The translations under genes and the position numbers were made by a program. DNA of 33,442 nucleotides from positions 71,701,161 to 71,734,602 of the forward strand of contig NC_068990.1 of the NCBI RefSeq assembly GCF_001194135.2. The letters run 5' to 3'. Below the pieces are notes generated by a model that searched no databases, had not been told where the DNA came from, and saw only the letters and a list, made by a program, of their open reading frames with translations. The stretch comes from Octopus bimaculoides (Eukaryota). Below, piece by piece: positions 8,950 to 21,245 of this stretch; positions within the stretch are counted from its first letter, which is position 1, and the number at the start of each line of letters is the position of its first letter.

Positions 8950-10182
8950 GGGATGGACAAAATAATGGAGACACTTAGCATCATAGCAGCATAATTTTGA
9001 AATATCTATAAAACCATCGAAAGCTTGTTTATTTTTGTTTTTTGATTTATTATTAGTGTTGCTTAATATGTTTTACTAAAATTGCTGTTTCTTTTCAGAT
9101 ATCATCAGAAAAAGGTAATTAAAATTCATTCAAATGACAGATCTATCGGACTTTCAAAGAGGTCAAATTGTTGGTGCTCGTATGGCAGGTGCTAGCATAA
9201 TGAAAACAGCCGAAATGTTTGGTGTATCAAGAAGTACTGTCTCAAAAGTAATGACAGTCTTTGAGAAAGAGGGAAAAACCTCCTCATCAAAACAAAACAC
9301 CAGAAGAAAACCAAAACTTTCAGATAGGGACCGTCGGATGCAAATTGTTAGAAAGGATCACAAAAATACAGCTCCCAAAATTACTGCAGAGCTTAATGGC
9401 TACCTCGAGAACCCAGTTTCCACAATAACTGTTCACTGGCAGTTGCACAAAGCTGGATTTCATGGGAGGGCTGCAATCAGAAAACACGTTGCAAAGTGAT
9501 CAGAGTGGAGTAAAAACCTACAGAATTAGTCCCTGGAGTAGTGGAAGAATGTTATTTTCTTGGACAAGTCATCCTTTACTTTATTTCTGACCACCAGCCG
9601 AGCATGCGTGTGGAGACAGCTAAAAGAAGCATTTGACTCAGACTGCCTTCTTCCAACATGGAGGAGGATCTCTGATGATCTGGAGGGTTATATCTTGGAA
9701 ATCTGCCAGCCCAGTGGTTTCTCTTCATAGCAAAATGAATAATCAAGACTATTTAAGCATTTTATCTGATCAAATTCATCCTACGGTTGCAGAACTGTTT
9801 CCAGAGGGAAATGCAATCTTTTAGGATGATAATGCACTAATTCACACAGCTAAAGTTGTTACTGAATGGCACGAGGAACATTCTGGTAAAGTTGAACATC
9901 ATATCTGGCCAGCACAGTCCCCAGATCTCAATAATATTGAGCATTTATGGTGCATTTTAGAAAAACAAGTAAGGAGTTAATATCCTCCACCATCATCACA
10001 AGAACTGGAGACTGTTTTAGCTGAAGAATGGACAAAAATTCCTTTCGAAACAATTCAAACTTTGTACGAATCTATACCTCGTAGAATTCAAGCTGTAATT
10101 ACTGCCAAAGGCAGTTGTACTCCATGTTTAAATAAATTTGTTTGAAACTTTAAGGTGTTTCCATTATTTTGTCCAACCCCTG
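8947..10182 (+). mobile_element. Full-length inactive Tc1/mariner element (1236 bp), DD36E spacing
   Basis: 30-bp TIRs caggggatggacaaaataatggagacactt and caggggttggacaaaataatggaaacacct (27/30 identical), with a TA target dinucleotide on both sides and an internal transposase. Confidence 0.95.
9134..10144 (+). pseudogene. Tc1-like transposase pseudogene with several stops and frameshifts
   Basis: HTH region MTDLSDFQRGQIVGARMAGAS..GRAAIRK; catalytic motifs VIFLDKSSF, HGGGSLMIW, *DDNALIH, WPAQSPDLNNIEHLW and C-terminal SIPRRIQAVITAKG. Confidence 0.92.
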
Positions 10183-12634
10183 TATATACACATCTACCTA
10201 TGTAAGTATTTGTTACAATCTTAATTTTACATATTGTTTGTAATTACTATTATTGTTACAATTCTGACGATGTAAGGAGTTTTCTCTCAAATGCTGGTGA
10301 AAGAAATTTGCACTTTATTTCAATATCTTCTGCTTCACATTTATGTCATACATTGATTTCTTTGGTAAATAAAAGATTGGGGAAGTAATGACATTCATGC
10401 CTGTTACTAGAATAAAAAGGACATAAGTGAAGCACATTGAACTGAGATTCAGCATGGAATCACAGTCACCAGGACTTGCTTCAAATTCTAACAGAGGCTG
10501 TATTTTACATGGTCACTTATTCCATTCATTGATCACCATTTTACAAGAAAAATATGTTTCGAGAATCTTCAACTGTTTTTAAGAAATAGCTATTGCACAA
10601 GCCAGTCTTTTATCTTTTCTTTTTATCAATCAAAGGACTGCGTCCATGCCAGGGACCTGAGACTACATGGTGGCAAAGCTAGCTTCTTAACCACACAGTC
10701 ATACCTGTGCTTAGGCACTGCATTATTAGTTTTTTTTTTTTAGATATTGAGGAACAGAAATTATTATTAAATATCAAATAAGACGGGTCTTTTATGCAGT
10801 CCCTCAATTTTGTTAAATATAGCTGCATAAATGCCTTCAACAAACTTCCTACTGTCTTTATATTAGGGCCATGTGATTTAGTTTCAACATCATGACAACA
10901 TGTTGCACACTAAAAATAAAAAGGCCACAGATAGAATGCTGATCAAAGACATCTTCAGTCAGTTAACTCGGTGACGTAGTTTTACTCCAATACACCTGTT
11001 ATGTGTAACTAGTAGGAAGACTCACCAACAGCAATTTACCAAGCAACAAATTAAATATTTATTACTCCCAAAATTTATCTTAAAAATATGAAAACATTGA
11101 TCAAAAGCAATGGGAAGAGGCTCACTAGCATATTCATTGTCATTGGGTTAGATGCAGATGTCTCATATAGAACACTACTATTAGCAACTACTTTTGGTCC
11201 ATCACATGTCTTTAATGCTGCAGTTGAGGTAGAGGGTTACTGTGCCCACACCTGAATGGAATGAAATGCTGAAATACCATAATTTTCATTGGTCAATTAT
11301 ATTTTGAATCTTGTGACATTTGAAATGTTCAAGCGAGTTGGGCCACAAGTAAGATTTTGCCACTGTTGGCATCTCATTTCCTCAAGTATCAGATGATATC
11401 CAGGAAGGAGACCTAGCTGGCCTAGCACTTCAGCCTCAAAATCACCTGAAGTACTGCCACAAATGTTCTGAGTGGCCTTAAAAATTATTAGAGAGGAAAA
11501 TCCTTGGTGCAATGTATAATGAAGGGAGTGTACATGCTTTTTTTAAATATTTATTTACTTGTTTTTATTTCAACTCAATTTTTACCATTTTTGCTTTTAC
11601 TTTGGCAAATTGGGATTACTAAAGACTTTTAAATGAGACGTCATGAGCTAATCCTCTCAGGTTCATAGCTCATAACGAACTTGTCTATTCTTTAGGCACA
11701 GTCAAAATATTTTCATCTCTTCAATGGAATTGCTTGCTAATTGCTAAATTATTGGTTGGTGTACTGCTGTTGTGAACATTGTGGAATTGCCGTTGGTGAA
11801 TATTATACACATGCACACATATATTGTGTCACTGAAGACTAGGTCTATGAATACACTTGTGCTATATTCCAAGCAAGAAAGCCTATTAATTCTTCCATTC
11901 TGTAACAAGGTTTCAGGACAAAGAAAAACAAACAAACCAGCTTTTACATTCTATGCCATAATATAAAGCCAGTGAGACACTTCAATTGTCTTAAATGGCT
12001 TGTTTCGGGTTAAACAACAACAAAAATATCAATATCATTTTATAACATAAAAGCTATAATTCCTTTACTCAGCCTTTCCTTTTCATTTCTGATATCATAT
12101 ATTTTGTGAACAATGGTACCATTAGTTACAGATTTTTAATAAGCCAACTGCTGGTTCACTGCATTTCTGTTAAAATGAAAGATAACAAGGGAACTGTGCA
12201 AGAAGGGCAGAACAAATCTCAGGAAGTGATGTAGTTTTGTTTTATTGACAATTTTCTCACCAATATATTTAAATAAGTGTGTGTGTGTGTGTATACACAC
12301 TTTATTTGTGGATTAAAAGGTTACCAATGATTTTATGCAAAGGGAAATCTCTTTACAATTTTCAAGCATACCATATGGGAACCTTGATACATGTTTCCAT
12401 TTTGGATGAGAATACACAAAGTTACAGGCAACTCTATGAGATTTTGAAAAAATAAATATACAGAGCATGGGCGGTAAGTTATAAGGAAATCTAAACTGTT
12501 GTCCCCTTTCCAGTTAGCCCTGGATTTTTGCAAGGAACTACATTTACCTTGGATTAATTCTTTAATTATCTTATGTGAGAAGGCTCATGCACATTCAAAT
12601 CTATAAATATAAATGCATACACATGTACACACAA

Positions 12635-12990
12635 AGGTGGCGAGCTGGCAGAAACGTTAGCACACTGGGCGAAATGCTTAGCGGTATTTCATCTGCCGCT
12701 ATGTTCTGAGTTCAAATTTTGCTGAGGTCAACTTTGCCTTTCATCCTTTCGGAGTCGATTAAATAAGTACCAGTTACACACAGGGGTTGATATAATCAAC
12801 CTAAAACGTTTGTCTGTCCTTGTTTGTCCCCTCTGTGTGTAGTCCCTTGTGGGTAGTAAAGAAATAACACATGCACACAGACATGCACAGGCACATACAC
12901 ACAGACATACACAAATACCAGTGTTTGTGTGACACATACACACAAACAAACACACAAGCATATACACACACACACACACACACACATACG
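12635..12990 (+). mobile_element. SINE family B head with a family-A-like 3' part
   Basis: aggtggcgagctggcagaaacgttagc, gagttcaaatt (B-box-like) and taaataagtaccag. Confidence 0.75.
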
Positions 12991-12994
12991 ATAG

Positions 12995-13105
12995 GCTTCT
13001 TTCAGTTTCTGTCTAACAAATCCACTCACAAGCGTAGAGTAGGAGACTGACCCCATGATCACATAATTGGGAAGCAAGCTTCTCAGCCACAGTCACAACT
13101 GTGGC
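12995..13105 (-). mobile_element. SINE family A 5' part
   Basis: ggcttctttcagtttctgtc, aaatccactcacaag and gggaagcaagcttctcagccacagtcac are the reverse complement of the family A head. Confidence 0.6.
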
Positions 13106-13124
13106 TATATATACTGTATGTTAA

Positions 13125-13335
13125 GGCAGTGAGCTGGCAGAAACGTTAACATGCCGGGTGAAATGCTTAGTAATATTTTGTCTGTCATTACATTCTGAGT
13201 TCAAATTCTGCCGAGGTCGACTTTGCCTTTCATCCTTTCAGGGTCAATAAATTAAGTACCATTTGCATACTGGGATCAAACTAATCGACTGGCCCCCTCC
13301 CCCAAAATTTCAGGCCTCGTGCTAGAGTAGAAAAG
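13125..13335 (+). mobile_element. SINE family B copy
   Basis: aggcagtgagctggcagaaacgttaac through ggcctcgtgctagagtagaaaag. Confidence 0.8.
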
Positions 13336-14287
13336 AATATATATATTGTACTTATTCTTTCTTCCTTTCTTTTTTCTTCTTATCTATAATATAAATTGAA
13401 CATGGGCGACCGTTGTATTCTTTCTTGTCTTGAGGTTCACGGCCAAACGGCTGGGTGGATTCGCGTGAAAAATGGCACACATGTGGGGATGGGTGCATAG
13501 ATTGGAAAACACTTTGTATCTTTTCTTAGTCCCCATAGTTACCGAAAAAAATCGATTAAAACAACCTGCGTGCGTGCATGTATGTGAGTGTGTGTCACTG
13601 AAGCCATTCACACATACAAACATACATAACCACACTCTCTCTCTCGGTTTTTCCCTGTCAATCACTCACTACAAAAACTGAATGGAAAATTTCAGTTATC
13701 TCTCTCTCTTTCTTTCTTTCCTTCTCTCTCATATACACACACACTATCAACATTACTCTCTCTGTCTTGCACACCCCATCAAACAAACACACACACACAG
13801 ACATATGCATGCACATTGATTCTTCCGTCTCACGCAAACTTCAAAAGTTCAGTCATAAAACTGTCCATGTCTCTTTTCATTAGACTCCAACTTCAAAAGA
13901 TCCCCTTTCCCCAAAACACATATTAAAAAAATATTTTCACTTGTCCGGCCATTGATCGAGAGATAAAACACAAACCACCTCCTACTGACTGCAAAACTCC
14001 CGCCAAATTAGCTGCAAAAAGCACACGCACACATACACACACGTCCAATACAATAGATCTCACATACATTTTCGTCTTCAACAGGTATGTATCTATTCTG
14101 TAATATAAATTGTTTTTCTATAAGCGTATAACATTTACTTATTCCATACTTCTTCACTTAGCTTTTATCTTCACTTTTCTTAAATGAGATATGTCTGCTA
14201 TTAATTCGTACAGCTTCATTTTCTGTTAAAGCAATTCTTAACGTCAACTTCTTAATGCTTCTTTATTTTCCTATCGCCCATACTTAC

Positions 14288-14339
14288 CGAGAACAGCAAT
14301 TAAAACTTTTTCTAATGCAATTCCCCTTTCTTCGACCAT
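14288..14339 (-). CDS. Candidate alternative first coding exon MVEERGIALEKVLIAVL(G), antisense inside a Helitron
   Basis: ATG at 14339-14337 with an in-frame upstream TGA, 17 codons plus 1 nt, then consensus donor G|gtaagt (phase 1, compatible with 6230-6261). It lies within TE sequence, so it may be coincidental. Confidence 0.3.
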
Positions 14340-14435
14340 TAACACAATCAGTTCCTCACACACCTTGAACTTTCTCAGTCAAACTACATAATACGCAGAA
14401 TTGGGGCATTAATACAGTAGGGAGATTTGGCTGCT

Positions 14436-15036
14436 ATGGAAAGTTCCGAGGTGGGGGAGGAATTGCTTCGTGGAAAGATCCGAGGGGGAAATTATTCCCT
14501 GGNNNNNNNNNNNNNNNNNNNNNNNNNNNNNNNNNNNNNNNNNNNNNNNNNNNNNNNNNNNNNNNNNNNNNNNNNNNNNNNNNNNNNNNNNNNNNNNNNN
14601 NNNNNNNNNNNNNNNNNNNNNNNNNNNNNNNNNNNNNNNNNNNNNNNNAAGTTCCGAGAACAAGCTACTTCCTGTAAAGTTCCGAGGATTTCCTGGAAAC
14701 TTCCGAGGAGATGTGGAGGAATTACTTCCTGGAAATTTCCGAGGTGATGTATTTATTTCTTGGAAACTTCCAAGGAATTGGAGGGTAGGAATTACTTCGG
14801 AGAAAGTTCTGAGGAATTACGCCCTGTAAAGTTTCAAGGAAATGGTAAAAAGCGTGGAATTACTACCTGCAAAGTTCCAAGGAGAGTGAGGAAGGGTAGG
14901 TGTTATTTCCTGGAAAGTTCCATGGAAGGGGAGGAATGGAAGGAATTACTTCCTGGAAAGTTCCAAGGCAGGGAAGGAATTACTTCCTGGAAAGTTCCGA
15001 GGAAGTTGAGGAATTACTTCCTGGAAAGTTCTGATG
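14436..15036. repeat. Array of about 15 visible copies of GAGGAATTACTTCCTGGAAAGTTCCGAGG with short variable spacers; putative STAT/kappaB/ETS motif cluster
   Basis: Perfect TTCCTGGAA at 14690, 14726, 14907, 14950, 14984 and 15018, most overlapped by GGAAA(G/C/T)TTCC. Interrupted by the N gap at 14503-14648. Confidence 0.85.
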
Positions 15037-15037
15037 A

Positions 15038-15414
15038 GGGGCGCCCATTATGCTGCTGCGAAATTTGGATGCTCCAATAATGTGTAACGGCATGTGCATG
15101 ATAATCAAAATTTATACTTCCGAGTTTTACAGGCAACCATCTTGAATGGACGCTGGTCTAGATGTTCTTATAACTCCAATGTCCCTCCCTCCCTCCGAAA
15201 CAATCTACAAGTTTAAGTGGCTTCAATTTCCTATCAAACTCTCCTTTGCAATGGCAATAAATTAGGCACAGGGTCAATCATTGCAAATGGTTGGTTTAAA
15301 TCTCACGGTCAGCATTACGTTGGATGCTCCCGTGTTGGCAGGCCACAAAGTCTATACATTTGTGCATCAGAAGGGAAAACGAGAAACGTTGCCTACAAAG
15401 AAGTACTCCACTGA
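15038..15414 (+). pseudogene. Helitron RepHel Pif1-like helicase C-terminal remnant
   Basis: GAPIMLLRNLDAP.MCNG, VLQATILNG, QFPIKLSFAMAIN*AQGQSL and SHGQHYVGCSRVG..EGKTRNVAYKEVLH*, with frameshifts and one stop. Confidence 0.9.
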
Positions 15415-15565
15415 AAAGACGGCATTTCTTCACGTTTTCCAATTCACCCCAGTCATCTGCCGCCTCGAAAGCTTCTTACTTGCCGTGCCAGCCAACGTAT
15501 GTCAATGACGCACAACTTCACTCATTCAGTCTATCTCTCTTTCTCACAGTCTTTCTCTCTAACAT

Positions 15566-15597
<32 letters not shown>

Positions 15598-17004
15598 ATC
15601 CATTTCATATATCTTTTAATTTCTGCTCTCTGCAAATAAAATTTTTACGGATACAACTGCTTACAAAAATTGTGATTAATGTATAATGTTCATAAATAAA
15701 TGTTTTAATGATTATACAGACGTCCAATAGAATAGCTCTCAGAAACAGACTACATACAAATTCTTTCTTCACAACTCCTGAAGCCATTTTCTGACAGGGG
15801 GTGATGAAATTCTCATACAGCTAGAGGCTCCAATCGAAACAGGGGACCCGAAATGATAAGGTTGAGAAATGCTGTTATAGATTATGCCTAACCAAAAACG
15901 ATCACAGCCACATCATCCAAACAGGCCGGGTGAAACCGGGTTTAGCTGCTAGTTATTATATATGCAAAACCTTTCAATCTGCATAACATACAGAGGGGTC
16001 ATTTGTAAAGCATCATTCAGTGAAAGGGAACACTGAGTCACAAAAGGCTGAGAACCACTGCTTTAGATTATATATCTAATGTTGAAAAAAACATGTTACT
16101 TATATAAAAAGGTCTTTTGTTTCACTCTTTTAATTCAATGCATTATATTTAAAACAGAGTAGGGATACATTCATTGATGTACTAATTATAAAGTAAATAG
16201 TCAACGTCAATGCATTCAATATATTTCCTTAAAATAATAACCAGAAGAGAAATACACTTTCAAACTGTATTCCTTGTTATAGTAAATGTTACATAAAACT
16301 CTTCATTGCTAAAAATCCATTCGTCCTTTGAAAGCAACCAACTGTCACTCCTCCTACCAATCAAAATATTATATAAAAATACAATCTAAAATATATCTTG
16401 AATAGTTTTTAATTTAATTTAATTTTTTTCTTTTTCTTCTTTTTGCTAAGAAGACTTAATGCAAAGAAATAGAAGGAAGTGTATGTTGAAAGCTGTGTAA
16501 TTATTATGGTCTAGTGAATTATTGTCTGGTTCCAATCTGAATATAATTAGCTATATTTGGTAAGTGGGAAAGCAGAAAACCTGTATTAAAAATGAAAACA
16601 TGAAAAAAAAAAAGGGAAAATAAATAAATAAATAAATAGTTAATTCTTCGAAGATCTTTAAATAGGAAAGTTTCCAATTGATGTGGAAACTGTTCATTAT
16701 GACAAAACATTTTCCATCTAATTGGTTGCATTCCCAAGCCTTTGTAATTTTATTGTGCTATATGATGTCAAAAAGAAAGAAAAATAAAAGGAAAAAACAA
16801 AAACAAAACATTTCTGGTGCAATTATAGATGAGAAAAATTGATTCTATAAAATAAAAATAGTAAAAATTGAAACTTTGTAAATGGGGGAAAAGAAAGTAA
16901 GTATAATTCTGTGAAAGCCATCAAGAACAGCAATAATGTAATATAATGTATGTTTGTGAATGTGTGTGCATATATGTACTGTACATAACATACATGTATG
17001 TATC

Positions 17005-17388
17005 TTTTACTTGTTTCACTCATTAGACTGTGGCCATGCTTGGGCACTGCCTTGAAGCGTTGGGTTAAACAAATCAAGCCCAGAATGTATTTTTTTTAAA
17101 GCCTAGTACTTATTCTGTCAGTCTGTTTTTGCTGACACTGAGCTAGAGAGATTGAAACAAACCAACACTAGTTGTCAAGTGGGGGAGGGTCAAACATGCA
17201 CACACAACACACACAAACATCTATATATGTACAGCAGGCTTCATTCAGTTTCTGTCTACGAAATCCACTCACAAGGCCTGGAGCTATAGCACAAAACACT
17301 TGCCCAAGATGCCACATGGTAGGACTGAAGCAAAAAGTTGTGCCACTGGGAAGCAAATTTCTTACCACACAACCATGCCTGCACCTAT
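17005..17388 (-). mobile_element. SINE family A copy
   Basis: ttttacttgtttcactcattagactgtggccatgc, gtacttattc, ttcagtttctgtctacgaaatccactcacaagg and cttaccacacaaccatgcctgcacc. Confidence 0.8.
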
Positions 17389-17406
17389 ATGTATATATGT
17401 GTGTGA

Positions 17407-18434: not shown

Positions 18435-18790
18435 GGCACATGGCTCAGTGGTTAGAGTGTCAGGCTCACAATCATGAGGTAGTGAGTTCAATTCCTGGAC
18501 CAGGCTGTGTGTTGTGTTCTTGAGCAAGACAATTTATTTCACATTACTCCAGATCACTCAGCTGTAGAAACAAGTTGTTTCGGCCAAGTTGTTTCGGCCA
18601 AGTTGTATCGGCCAAGTTGTATCGGCCAAGTTGTATCGGCCTTTGCCTTTCATTTGAATAACATCAGTCCATGGAGAAGGGAGGCTGGTATGCATGGGGG
18701 ATTGTTGGTCTTCCATAAACAACCTTGCCTTGACTTATGCTTTGGAGGGAAACTTTCTAAGTGCAATCCCATAGTCATCCAGTGAGTTGG
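18435..18790 (+). mobile_element. tRNA-derived SINE family C
   Basis: tggctcagtggttag (A box) and gagttcaattcc (B box), followed by a non-tRNA body. Confidence 0.75.
18571..18640. repeat. 14-bp tandem repeat x5 (caagttgtWtcggc) inside the SINE
   Basis: Two units of caagttgtttcggc, then three of caagttgtatcggc. Confidence 0.95.
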
Positions 18791-19318: not shown

Positions 19319-19334
19319 CACCACCTCAGAAATA

Positions 19335-19502
19335 ATTATTATAACATCCATTACTATTATTGTCATAGAAAAGATTATTATAACATCCATTACTATTATT
19401 GTCATAGAAATGATTATTACAACATCCATTACTATTATTGTCATAGAAAAGATTATTATAACATCCATTATTATTATTGTCATAGAAATGATTATTATAA
19501 CA
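19335..19502. repeat. 39-bp minisatellite, about 4.3 copies
   Basis: Unit attattataacatccattactattattgtcatagaaaWg starting at 19335, 19374, 19413 and 19452. Confidence 0.95.
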
Positions 19503-20068: not shown

Positions 20069-20249
20069 TACATTCACTTATAAATACAGCATACACACAT
20101 GTGCATGGATGGATAGATGGATGTATAGATAGACAGACAGGTAGTTAACCAAATTTAAAACATTTAGGATTACAATTTACTGTCAAGTTTTTAGTACTGT
20201 GTTCTTTCTACTTGTTTGTACTTTAGTACAGTAAATTTATCACACAGAC

Positions 20250-20276
<27 letters not shown>

Positions 20277-20280
<4 letters not shown>

Positions 20281-21245
20281 GAGCGTAACTGTGAGAATAA
20301 GATTAGGCTGGGGAAAGTTCAGAGAGCTCCTACCCCTGCTAGCAACACAGAGCCTCTCTCTCACAATGAAAGGCAGATTGTTTGATGCCTGTGTGCGAAC
20401 AGCTATACTACACGGCAGTGAAACACGGGCTATGACAGATGAGGACATGTGTAGACTTGAGAGGAATGAAACCAGTATGCTTTGCTGGATGTGCAATGTC
20501 AGTGTGCATGTTCGACAGAGTGTAAGCATCTTGAGAAAAAAGTTAGGCATGAGAGGATTCAGATGTGGTGTACAAGAGAGACGACTGCGCTGGTATGGTC
20601 ATGTGATGCATATAGACGAGGACAGCTGTGTAAAGAAGTGCCAATCTCCAGCTGTAGAGGGAACCTGTGGTAGAGGTAGACCCAGGAAGACATGGGACGA
20701 GGTGACAATGAATCTCAGAGGCAATGATTAGTGACTGAGACCTTTGGCATTGTACTCTGCTTAAGAGGACCCATCAAGCCACGTGCACCTGTGCTGGTGG
20801 CATGTAAAAAAAAATCAACCTTTGAATGTTGGGCCCCATGGAGGTAAAATGGCCGAGTTCCTTTTGAACATTGGGCCTCATGGAGGCAGAGTGGCTGAGT
20901 TCCTTTCGAGTGGGCCTCATAGTGGTGAGGTGGCTGAGTTCCTTTTGAATGCTGGGCTTCATGGAGGCAATGACCAAGACCTTTGGCATTATGTTGTGCT
21001 TGAGAAGAAGACCCATCAAGTCAAGCAAAATAGCAGTCATGGCAGATACCAGTGTCACACAAATGGCACCCGTGCTGGTGGCACGTAAAAGCACTCTTTA
21101 CATTCTAGGAGTGGTTGTCATTAAGAAGGGCATCCAGCTGTAGAAAACCATATCAAATCAGACTGGAGCCTGGCACAGCCTTCCAGTGTACTAGCCCAGT
21201 CAAACCATCCAGCCCATGGACAATGGATGTTAAATAATGATGATG
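20277..21245 (+). mobile_element. 5'-truncated RTE-clade LINE: ORF2 C-terminus (open 20277-20731), 3' UTR and (TGA)n tail
   Basis: RIRLGWGKFRELLPLL..KGRLFDACVRTAILHGSET..QERRLRWYGHV..GRGRPRKTW are hallmark RTE C-terminal motifs. The 5' end abuts a (CA)n tract. Confidence 0.92.
20821..20970. repeat. 39-42-bp tandem repeat x3.6 in the RTE 3' UTR
   Basis: Units like tttgaa..tgggcctcatggagg...tggctgagttcct at 20821, 20863, 20905 and 20944. Confidence 0.85.

What the first reader, a model, noticed from the sequence alone, without database searches (positions are those of the whole stretch)
13383..15952. Helitron carrying a dense array of composite STAT/kappaB/ETS-like sites: a possible mobile immune or stress enhancer
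Seen: a 2.57-kb element with Helitron termini (A|TC...hairpin...CTAG|T). Its helicase remnant is fused directly to about 15 copies of GAGGAATTACTTCCTGGAAAGTTCCGAGG (14436-15036) with variable spacers. The core is conserved while the spacers drift, unlike a simple minisatellite. Known: TTCCTGGAA is a STAT GAS site; CAGGAAGT (minus strand) is an ETS core; GGAACTTTCC (minus strand) is one mismatch from the Ig-kappa kappaB site GGGACTTTCC; GGAAATTTCC at 14731 is Rel-like. Helitrons are known to spread TF-site arrays (HSEs in Caenorhabditis, MSL sites in Drosophila miranda). Inference: this family could wire cephalopod genes to JAK-STAT/NF-kB signalling.
Basis: partly seen in the sequence, partly recalled or inferred. 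Interest (0 to 1): 0.8.

Follow-up and report, generated by a model that had tools for sequence, protein, structure and literature searches.

The report
Dead octopus Helitron with a minisatellite
This is a decayed Helitron transposon remnant in an octopus genome that abuts a tandem repeat rich in TTCC/GGAA; nothing obtainable here shows the repeat is an immune enhancer, and its decay pattern looks neutral.

Summary
The sequence features are real. A tandem array lies at 14420-15036: 13 alignable 27-nt cores plus two partial units at a 146-N gap. It ends 1 nt before a pseudogenised Pif1-type helicase C-terminus (15038-15414). A 3' tail follows and ends CTAG|T at 15952.

An Octopus sinensis copy is 83-85% identical over 15041-15951. 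It loses homology exactly at the CTAG/CTAA terminus and encodes Helitron Rep plus PIF1. The 3' 915 bp is therefore a genuine Helitron remnant.

- **5' end unverified.** The motif at 13383 recurs at 14097, and no second copy supports either position.
- **Hairpin weak.** It is a 4-bp stem, no better than shuffled sequence.
- **Motifs.** There are 11 TTCN3GAA sites but no strict kappaB consensus, and all are copies of one unit.
- **No sign of constraint.** Cores are 80% identical pairwise, no better than the dead Helitron flank. STAT-site columns are no better conserved than other core columns. The most eroded position is a CpG. The two related copies carry no array.

Whether the array travels with a family could not be tested, because no cephalopod genome search was available. 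Best reading: an ordinary decayed Helitron carrying or adjoining a hairpin-prone minisatellite.

The parts
13383..13398 (+). Candidate Helitron 5' terminus no. 1 (A|TCTATAATATAAATTG)
   Evidence: Read directly. TC is preceded by A. No second copy confirms it. Unverified.
13383..14096 (+). 5' segment, non-coding and microsatellite-rich ((TG)n, (TC)n, (CA)n). It may be part of the element or a separate truncated element
   Evidence: There are no ORFs of note in any of the six frames. There is no homology to O. sinensis loci L003/L004. A 35-nt stretch at 14034-14068 is 83% identical to 15713-15747 in the 3' tail.
14097..14112 (+). Candidate Helitron 5' terminus no. 2 (T|TCTGTAATATAAATTG)
   Evidence: It matches 13383-13398 at 15 of 16 positions. 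About 0.1 matches with up to 2 mismatches are expected per shuffled window. Similarity does not extend beyond about 20 nt.
14113..14419 (+). Unique AT-rich non-coding spacer between the second 5'-like motif and the array
   Evidence: No repeats, no coding signal and no homology to L003/L004.
14420..15036 (+). Minisatellite array. Core consensus is GGAATTACTTCCTGGAAAGTTCCGAGG. There are 13 alignable cores plus 2 partial units. Spacers are purine-rich, 0-16 nt. The array contains the assembly gap 14503-14648
   Evidence: As single-stranded DNA, 14899-15036 folds at -25.1 kcal/mol against -13.4 +/- 2.6 for shuffles, z = -4.55.
14503..14648 (.). Assembly gap (146 N) inside the array
   Evidence: Both edges lie inside repeat units.
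15038..15414 (+). Pseudogenised C-terminal remnant of a Helitron RepHel protein (Pif1 2B domain to the natural stop). It has in-frame stops at 15143-15145 and 15263-15265 and a frameshift near 15300-15320
   Evidence: Translation. Pfam Pif1_2B_dom E = 6.7e-05, 23.0 bits against a cut-off of 23.9. Homologues at E = 3e-36, 84% identity to an O. bimaculoides 'ATP-dependent DNA helicase'. DNA identity to O. sinensis copies is 82-85%.
15415..15952 (+). Helitron 3' untranslated tail and right terminus, ending CTAG, with a (CA)n tract at 15562-15598
   Evidence: 83% identical to L002:6793-7538 (= L004:10793-11538). Homology ends exactly at the terminus.
15926..15939 (+). Weak subterminal palindrome (CCGG-GTGAAA-CCGG), 13 nt from the 3' end
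   Evidence: dG -4.3 kcal/mol, z = 0.10. Not kept in L004, which reads CCGG...CCAG.

Best explanation
The locus is a dead, heavily deleted Helitron copy in an octopod genome. Only the last ~915 bp are demonstrably Helitron: the helicase C-terminus from the 2B domain onward, the 3' tail and the CTAG terminus.

At the point where the rest of the Rep-helicase gene should continue, there is instead a ~470-620-bp minisatellite. Its 27-nt core is rich in the self-complementary pair TTCC/GGAA.

I infer that the array grows and shrinks by replication slippage or unequal exchange. The hairpins that the TTCC/GGAA units form in single-stranded DNA would favour this. Its purine-rich spacers are the most slippage-prone part. 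The cores are decaying at about the neutral rate, fastest at a methylatable CpG.

The matches to STAT, ETS and Rel consensus sequences are by-products of the unit's TTCC/GGAA composition, multiplied by tandem amplification.

- Shown: the anatomy, the Helitron identity of the 3' part, the junction, the decay pattern, and the folding potential.
- Inferred: the slippage mechanism and the absence of regulatory function.
- Unresolved: whether the array lies inside a mobile unit bounded by a true 5' end at 13383 or 14097.
For: Helitron identity:
- The helicase remnant has stops and a frameshift.
- The closest proteins are octopus Pif1-like helicases.
- O. sinensis relative L004 encodes Helitron_like_N (E = 1.3e-38), PIF1 (2.1e-44) and Pif1_2B (3.8e-14).
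- Homology runs over 15041-15951 and ends at CTAG|T / CTAA|T.
- There are no terminal inverted repeats.

Junction: homology to both relatives begins at 15038/15041, 1-4 nt after the last core. In the relatives, intact helicase coding sequence lies upstream instead.

Minisatellite behaviour:
- Sub-blocks have periods of 43 and 34 bp.
- The three 3'-most cores are 93-100% identical to the consensus.
- Spacers are purine-rich with almost no C.
- Single-strand folding gives z = -4.55.
- The assembly broke inside the array.

Neutral decay:
- Mean pairwise core identity is 0.80, against 0.83-0.85 for the dead Helitron tail versus its relative.
- GAS columns score 0.81 against 0.80 for the other columns.
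- The CpG is lost by transition in 7 of 13 cores and is the weakest column.
- Window CpG observed/expected is 0.28.

Precedent: Helitron-superfamily elements with central tandem repeats are common in molluscs (PMC7492417). Helitrons are known and recently active in octopus (PMC13282606).
Against: - Cores are clearly more alike than equal-length spacers, 71-93% against 29-69%. Selection on the cores would also produce this pattern. My slippage explanation for the spacers is an inference.
- Identity between units does not fall with distance along the array (Spearman rho 0.08, p = 0.58), so simple neighbour-duplication dynamics are not evident.
- The comparison of core divergence with Helitron-tail divergence assumes the array is about as old as the family, which is unknown.
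- Only one independent related insertion was available. L003 and L004 share flanks and are duplicates of each other.
- No binding, chromatin or expression data can be consulted here.
Confidence: 0.6

Rival explanations
1. The array is a functional cluster of STAT (GAS), ETS and Rel/NF-kB sites carried by a non-autonomous Helitron family. It acts as a signal-inducible enhancer that is spread to new genes by transposition.
For: - There are 11 TTCN3GAA sites, 6 of them the palindromic TTCCNGGAA, in 471 readable bp, against 9 in the other ~31.7 kb.
- Five CMGGAAGT sites and 7 relaxed kappaB-like sites (GGRRNNYYCC).
- Cores are more conserved than spacers.
- Precedent: Helitrons carry dense heat-shock-element clusters that rewire the Caenorhabditis heat-shock response (PMC6927752).
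Against: - All sites are copies of one unit, so they count as one occurrence.
- There are no strict kappaB (GGGRNNYYCC) or HGGARNYYCC matches.
- GAS columns are no more conserved than the rest of the core.
- The CpG is decaying.
- Cores are no more conserved than dead Helitron sequence.
- The related copies L001-L004 have no array.
- There is no other copy in the 33-kb window.
- Translations of the array have no relatives among 5.8 billion predicted proteins (weak evidence).
- No gene is recognisable in the window for it to regulate.
Confidence: 0.05
2. The Helitron is simply 5'-truncated at about 15038. The array and everything upstream (13383-15036) are unrelated flanking DNA: a local minisatellite or another repeat. 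The 'A|TC' at 13383 is then a coincidence.
For: - Homology to the only available relatives stops exactly at 15038/15041, and nothing upstream matches 20 kb of either locus.
- A 'TC' after an 'A' carries almost no information.
- There is no coding or structural Helitron feature in 13383-15036.
Against: - The 16-mer TCTATAATATAAATTG occurs twice on the Helitron's strand, 714 bp apart and upstream of the array. It resembles AT-rich Helitron 5' ends (my recollection, not tested).
- A 35-nt stretch of the upstream segment is 83% identical to the 3' tail.
- Non-autonomous Helitrons normally share only their termini with autonomous relatives, so lack of internal homology is expected.
Confidence: 0.25
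3. The unit is a composite of two Helitron pieces. A first element starts at 13383 and lacks its own 3' end. A second starts at 14097 and carries the array and the helicase remnant. They were joined by tandem insertion or by read-through past a missing terminator, and may be mobilised together from 13383 to 15952.
For: - Two 5'-terminus-like 16-mers lie on the same strand.
- Partial similarity exists between 13699-14068 and the 3' tail at 15530-15747.
- Bypass of the 3' end and capture of flanking DNA is an experimentally shown Helitron behaviour (PMC4778049).
Against: - Similarity between the two 5' regions stops after about 20 nt.
- The similarity to the 3' tail is mostly microsatellite plus one 35-nt match at E = 5e-4.
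- The base before 14097 is T, not A.
- No second copy was available to test this.
Confidence: 0.1

Closest known systems
Canonical animal Helitrons (e.g. Helibat/Helraiser; PMC4778049)
   Same: - A RepHel-derived helicase remnant.
- A CTRR 3' terminus followed by T.
- No terminal inverted repeats.
- A short palindrome about 11-13 nt from the 3' end.
- An AT-rich insertion site.
- A related copy encodes Helitron_like_N plus PIF1.
   Different: - About 95% of the coding region is missing.
- The palindrome is only 4 bp (19 bp in Helraiser) and is not significant.
- The 5' end is unverified.
- A minisatellite sits where the helicase gene should continue.
Cg_HINE non-autonomous Helentrons of the Pacific oyster, and DINE-1-like elements, which carry central tandem repeats (PMC7492417)
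   Same: A mollusc Helitron-superfamily element laid out as left flank with microsatellites, then a variable segment, then a central tandem-repeat array, then a right flank.
   Different: - No subterminal inverted repeats.
- Termini are TC...CTAG at an A|T site, not Helentron-type.
- The right flank is a helicase pseudogene.
- The unit is 21-43 bp with irregular spacers, not a satellite-like monomer.
- Family-wide presence of the array is not shown.
Helitron-borne heat-shock-element clusters in Caenorhabditis (PMC6927752)
   Same: A dense, repetitive cluster of short palindromic factor-type motifs built on GAA/TTC inside or next to a Helitron. GAANNTTC occurs 9 times in the array.
   Different: - There, thousands of copies, HSF-1 occupancy and gene induction were shown.
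- Here there is one copy and no three-unit HSE.
- The relatives lack the array.
- No functional data exist.
Ordinary GC-skewed, hairpin-forming minisatellites
   Same: - Head-to-tail units of tens of bp.
- Sub-blocks of different period.
- Purine/pyrimidine strand asymmetry.
- Strong single-strand folding.
- Assembly failure inside the array.
   Different: Cores are markedly better conserved than the inter-core spacers. This is unusual for a uniform-unit minisatellite. Here I attribute it to slippage in the purine spacers.

Membership tests
Canonical Helitron | Encodes, or descends from, a Rep (HUH) plus SF1B Pif1-like helicase protein | tested here: met
   The window carries a helicase C-terminal pseudogene at 15038-15414. 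The 83-85% identical O. sinensis copy encodes Helitron_like_N (E = 1.3e-38), PIF1 (2.1e-44) and Pif1_2B.
Canonical Helitron | 3' terminus CTRR joined to a T of the host | tested here: met
   CTAG|T at 15949-15953. Homology with L002/L004 ends exactly there, and that copy reads CTAA|T. This rests on one independent comparison.
Canonical Helitron | 5' terminus TC joined to an A of the host | tested here: inconclusive
   A|TC is present at 13382|13383. A second near-identical 16-mer lies at 14097 and is preceded by T. No related copy contains either motif, so the boundary is not established.
Canonical Helitron | Short palindrome (hairpin) about 10-12 nt upstream of the 3' end | tested here: inconclusive
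   CCGG-N6-CCGG lies at the right distance. However, dG is -4.3 kcal/mol, z = 0.10, 93 of 200 shuffles fold as well, and it is disrupted in L004.
Canonical Helitron | No terminal inverted repeats | tested here: met
   The best inverted match between either candidate 5' end and the 3' end is 7 nt, which is no better than shuffles.
Helentron / HINE (tandem-repeat-carrying non-autonomous elements) | 11-12-bp subterminal inverted repeats and a 3' palindrome. Helentron-type protein with an endonuclease domain after the helicase | tested here: not met
   There are no subTIRs. The helicase ORF ends at its natural stop (15412-15414) and is followed by non-coding tail, both here and in L004. A central tandem array and left-flank microsatellites are present. 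The resemblance is architectural only.
Transposon-borne transcription-factor site array (as in Caenorhabditis HSE Helitrons) | Motifs match the factor's established consensus | tested here: inconclusive
   - GAS TTCN3GAA: 11 sites.
- TTCCNGGAA: 6 sites.
- Strict kappaB GGGRNNYYCC: 0.
- HGGARNYYCC: 0.
- Relaxed GGRRNNYYCC: 7.
- CMGGAAGT: 5.
- Three-unit HSE: 0.

Cephalopod STAT and Rel specificities are not known to me.
Transposon-borne transcription-factor site array (as in Caenorhabditis HSE Helitrons) | The array is shared by many copies of the transposon family | not testable with these tools
   No cephalopod genome can be searched by DNA. The two retrievable relatives (one independent locus, duplicated) have no array. 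A protein-space search with the array's translation found nothing. The two metagenome scans gave nothing related: none with the 23-mer, and two unrelated chance matches with the gapped pattern.
Transposon-borne transcription-factor site array (as in Caenorhabditis HSE Helitrons) | Motif positions are conserved above background | tested here: not met
   Within this array, GAS columns score 0.81 against 0.80 for other core columns. KappaB-like columns score 0.83 against 0.78. Cores overall score 0.80, against 0.83-0.85 for the dead Helitron tail versus its relative. A cross-copy test was not possible.
Transposon-borne transcription-factor site array (as in Caenorhabditis HSE Helitrons) | Factor occupancy and induction of neighbouring genes | not testable with these tools
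   This needs wet-lab or functional-genomic data.
Minisatellite | Head-to-tail repeats of about 10-100 bp with internal variants and length heterogeneity | tested here: met
   TRF rows with periods of 21, 43 and 34 bp. There are 13 cores with spacers of 0-16 nt.

The most novel reading that the evidence does not exclude
An octopod non-autonomous Helitron family carries, as part of its mobile unit, an array of palindromic GAS-type (TTCCTGGAA) sites that overlap GAANNTTC / kappaB-like half-site pairs. Copies near genes would act as cytokine-, infection- or stress-inducible enhancers. This would be a cephalopod counterpart of the Caenorhabditis HSE Helitrons.
Probability: 0.04. Interest if true: 0.7.

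Novelty: new member of a known kind. Interest (0 to 1): 0.2.

Why it matters
As it stands, this is one more decayed Helitron with an internal or adjacent minisatellite. Its main use is as an annotation note for octopus repeat libraries, and as an example of an assembly gap caused by a hairpin-forming array.

It would matter only if a genome-wide search showed the array riding on many Helitron copies near inducible genes. That would give cephalopods a documented case of transposon-mediated rewiring of an immune or stress pathway.

Tried and rejected
1. **Origin of the repeat unit from the helicase coding stretch just upstream of the junction.** In the relatives this stretch reads TEFLNSQTPPELPPHELHLKDGAPIM, and the array translates as NYFLESSEE/ELLPGKF, so it looked promising by eye. 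Local alignment of the last three units to that region scores 7-8. Between 41% and 66% of all windows in L003/L004 do as well, and the top hits lie elsewhere. Rejected.

2. **Other array copies through protein space.** The 106-aa ORF across the array has no relative in 5.8 billion proteins. This is a weak negative, because octopus non-coding DNA is barely represented there.

3. **Closing the gap or finding other assemblies by exact ORF look-up.** Three window ORFs or proteins and two O. bimaculoides UniRef proteins are not on record.

4. **Metagenome scans.** The 23-mer core gave nothing. Two cores with a variable gap gave two hits. One is a bacterial 19-bp duplication and the other a 10-12-bp AAGTTCCTGGAA tandem in an unrelated small contig.

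5. **Defining the family's 5' terminus.** The O. sinensis copies, with 10-kb flanks, contain neither 5' motif. L003 and L004 share flanks on both sides, so they give no boundary. A Rep-domain search found no further close octopus copies: the best hit is 71% identical on a 1.4-kb contig, and the rest are about 55% from arthropods and nematodes.

6. **Helentron-type subterminal inverted repeats.** None found.

7. **Heat-shock elements.** There is no three-unit HSE.

8. **Rfam.** Only sub-threshold chance hits in 12000-17400.

9. **Bacterial promoter/terminator scan.** Irrelevant for a eukaryotic sequence and uninformative.

10. **Literature search for the 15-mer core.** No paper contains it.
Full report
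**What is in the sequence**

The window is repeat-dense octopod DNA. It has tRNA-type SINE copies just upstream (12634-12866 and 13123-13340), many microsatellites and six assembly gaps. GC content is 36% and CpG observed/expected is 0.28.

Between 14420 and 15036 lies a tandem array. The 15-mer TTCCTGGAAAGTTCC with up to 3 mismatches occurs 12 times in the window, against 0.79 expected. Eleven of the 12 matches are in the array.

Parsing by hand gives 13 alignable cores with the consensus GGAATTACTTCCTGGAAAGTTCCGAGG, plus two partial units cut by the gap. Spacers are 0-16 nt, purine-rich and almost free of C. Tandem Repeats Finder sees sub-blocks with periods of 21, 43 (3.9 copies, 75% matches) and 34 bp (2.9 copies, 89% matches).

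**The gap**

The 146 N at 14503-14648 lie inside the array. The left edge ends in mid-unit (...ATTATTCCCTGG) and the right edge resumes in mid-unit (AAGTTCCGAG...). The array is therefore continuous across the gap, and the number of hidden units is unknown (0 to about 4).

No reading frame is involved. Periods are not multiples of three, and all frames carry stops. The segment 14899-15036 folds strongly as single-stranded DNA, at -25.1 kcal/mol against -13.4 +/- 2.6 for shuffles, z = -4.55. This plausibly explains both the assembly failure and the instability of the array.

**The Helitron part**

One nucleotide after the last core, at 15038, a reading frame begins with GAPIMLLRNLDAPIMCNG... 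It runs, with two in-frame stops (15143-15145 and 15263-15265) and one frameshift, to a natural C-terminus ...GKTRNVAYKEVLH* at 15414.

- It matches the Pif1 2B domain (E = 6.7e-05, just under Pfam's cut-off).
- It matches predicted octopus 'ATP-dependent DNA helicase' proteins (E = 3e-36, 84% identity to an O. bimaculoides protein).
- Two O. sinensis loci align at 82-85% DNA identity, starting at 15038/15041.
- One of them (L002, or L004 with longer flanks) aligns through to 15951. It loses all similarity immediately after its own CTAA|T, where the window has CTAG|T.
- That copy encodes Helitron_like_N (E = 1.3e-38), PIF1 (2.1e-44) and Pif1_2B.

The 3' 915 bp of the finding is therefore a genuine canonical Helitron remnant with a verified right terminus. 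There are no terminal inverted repeats and no endonuclease domain after the helicase. It is not a Helentron.

**What is not established**

*The 5' end.* A|TC at 13383 is present. However, the same 16-mer (TCTATAATATAAATTG) recurs with one mismatch at 14097, and similarity between the two places ends after about 20 nt. Neither motif, nor anything from 13383-15036, matches 20 kb around either O. sinensis copy. A Rep-domain search found no further close octopus copies to define the family's left terminus. The element may start at 13383, at 14097, or (if 5'-truncated) at about 15038.

*The hairpin.* It is a 4-bp CCGG/CCGG stem at the right distance from the end. It is no more stable than shuffled sequence (z = 0.10) and is not kept in the relative.

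**Testing the functional idea as far as sequence allows**

The quoted motif strings are there. In 471 readable bp there are 11 TTCN3GAA sites, six of them TTCCNGGAA, against nine and zero in the rest of the window. There are also five CMGGAAGT sites, seven relaxed kappaB-like sites and nine GAANNTTC sites. There are no strict kappaB (GGGRNNYYCC), no HGGARNYYCC and no three-unit heat-shock elements.

All of these are copies of one unit. The enrichment is one occurrence multiplied by tandem amplification. By a rough estimate from general knowledge, a random 27-mer has a high chance of matching at least one of the hundreds of six-base consensus motifs in use.

Three results argue against constraint on binding sites.

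1. Mean pairwise core identity is 0.80. This is no higher than the 0.83-0.85 between the dead Helitron tail and its O. sinensis relative.
2. The nine GAS columns (0.81) are no better conserved than the other core columns (0.80). The kappaB-like columns are barely better, 0.83 against 0.78.
3. The weakest core column is the G of a CpG. The CpG has been lost by transition in 7 of 13 cores, in a window with CpG observed/expected of 0.28. This is the signature of methylation-driven neutral decay.

The spacers are purine runs containing fragments of the core's own ends (GGAA, GAGG; a 9-bp GGAATGGAA sub-repeat). I infer that they vary through small-scale slippage and not through relaxed selection.

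**Does the array travel with the family?**

This is the decisive question, and I could not answer it.

- The two related copies carry intact helicase coding sequence where the window has the array, and contain no core motif. They share flanks and count as one independent locus.
- No other copy exists in the window.
- The array's translation has no relatives among 5.8 billion proteins.
- Metagenome scans gave only chance hits.
- No cephalopod genome can be searched by DNA with these tools, and exact-ORF look-ups failed.

**An idea that failed**

The array's translations (NYFLESSEE, ELLPGKF) resemble the helicase segment TEFLNSQTPPELPPHELHLK that precedes GAPIM in the relatives. This suggested the unit grew out of the coding sequence at the breakpoint. 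Alignment statistics do not support it: 41-66% of control windows score as well.

**Comparison with known systems**

Defining Helitron features are taken from PMC4778049: 5'-TC, CTRR-3', no inverted repeats, a subterminal palindrome and A|T insertion. The remnant meets the protein, 3'-end and no-TIR criteria. The 5' end and hairpin are inconclusive.

In architecture it resembles the tandem-repeat-carrying non-autonomous Helentrons of oysters (PMC7492417), but it fails their terminal-structure criteria. That case rests on thousands of copies, factor occupancy and gene induction, none of which is available here. Helitrons are known in octopus, with recently active copies (PMC13282606).

**Verdict**

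The structural label 'Helitron remnant fused to a tandem array' stands. The element's size, 5' end and hairpin are unverified. The enhancer interpretation is unsupported and mildly disfavoured.

The best reading is an ordinary decayed Helitron carrying or adjoining a hairpin-prone minisatellite (confidence about 0.6). The main structural rival is a 5'-truncated Helitron beside an unrelated minisatellite (0.25). Interest is low (0.2). A simple genome-wide BLAST would settle the matter.

Noticed in passing
window 12634-12866 and 13123-13340; L003:3081-3500: Two copies of an octopod SINE (head GGCGAGCTGGCAGAAACGTTAGCAC...) lie directly upstream of the finding. They match an inverted pair in the O. 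sinensis locus at 84-86% identity. A 16-nt stretch of the SINE (AACATGCCGGGTGAAA, 13148) resembles the Helitron's subterminal palindrome region (AACAGGCCGGGTGAAA, 15920) (D18). This is probably chance.
   Followed up: partly
window 9134-9499 (+): A 121-aa ORF with Tc1/Tc3-type transposase helix-turn-helix domains (HTH_Tnp_Tc3_2 E = 2.5e-07, HTH_23, HTH_28). It is the N-terminal fragment of a Tc1/mariner transposase.
   Followed up: partly
window 20216-20731 (+): A 171-aa ORF containing ...RRLRWYGHVMH...GRGRPRKTWDEV..., which from memory looks like the C-terminal tail of a LINE reverse-transcriptase ORF. It has no Pfam hit.
   Followed up: partly
window 19328-19502; 18571-18641; 20821-20967; 2436-2512: Other well-preserved minisatellites: 39 bp x4.5 (94% matches), 14 bp x5.1 (98%), 42 bp x3.6 (76%) and 26 bp x3.0 (98%). 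Tandem arrays are common in this window, so the array in the finding is not exceptional as a sequence class.
   Followed up: no
L003 (O. sinensis CM016887.1) vs L004 (VCDQ01012807.1): The two O. sinensis Helitron loci share sequence on both sides of the element at 86-93% identity. L003 has lost most of the Rep region and the last ~370 bp of the 3' tail. They are duplicates of a larger segment, not independent insertions.
   Followed up: partly
window 14034-14068 vs 15713-15747: A 35-nt stretch (ACGTCCAATAcAATAGaTCTCA...) of the upstream segment is 83% identical to the Helitron 3' tail. In both places it is preceded by (TC)n and (CA)n tracts. This could be a partial duplication of the tail or a remnant of a second element.
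   Followed up: partly
L005:4284-4400 (metagenome contig Ga0256406_1015395): An unrelated small contig carries about 10 tandem copies of a 10-12-bp unit, AAGTTCCTGGAA(A). This shows that the TTCCTGGAA string arises in tandem repeats elsewhere by chance.
   Followed up: no
one search hit list: The Rep domain of the O. sinensis Helitron has its nearest annotated relatives (53-59% identity) in aphids, fruit flies, spiders, hookworms and filarial nematodes, not in other molluscs (Nucella hit at 68% over 57% of the query, cuttlefish at 48%, Mytilus at 46%). A patchy distribution like this is often seen with horizontally transferred Helitrons.
   Followed up: no
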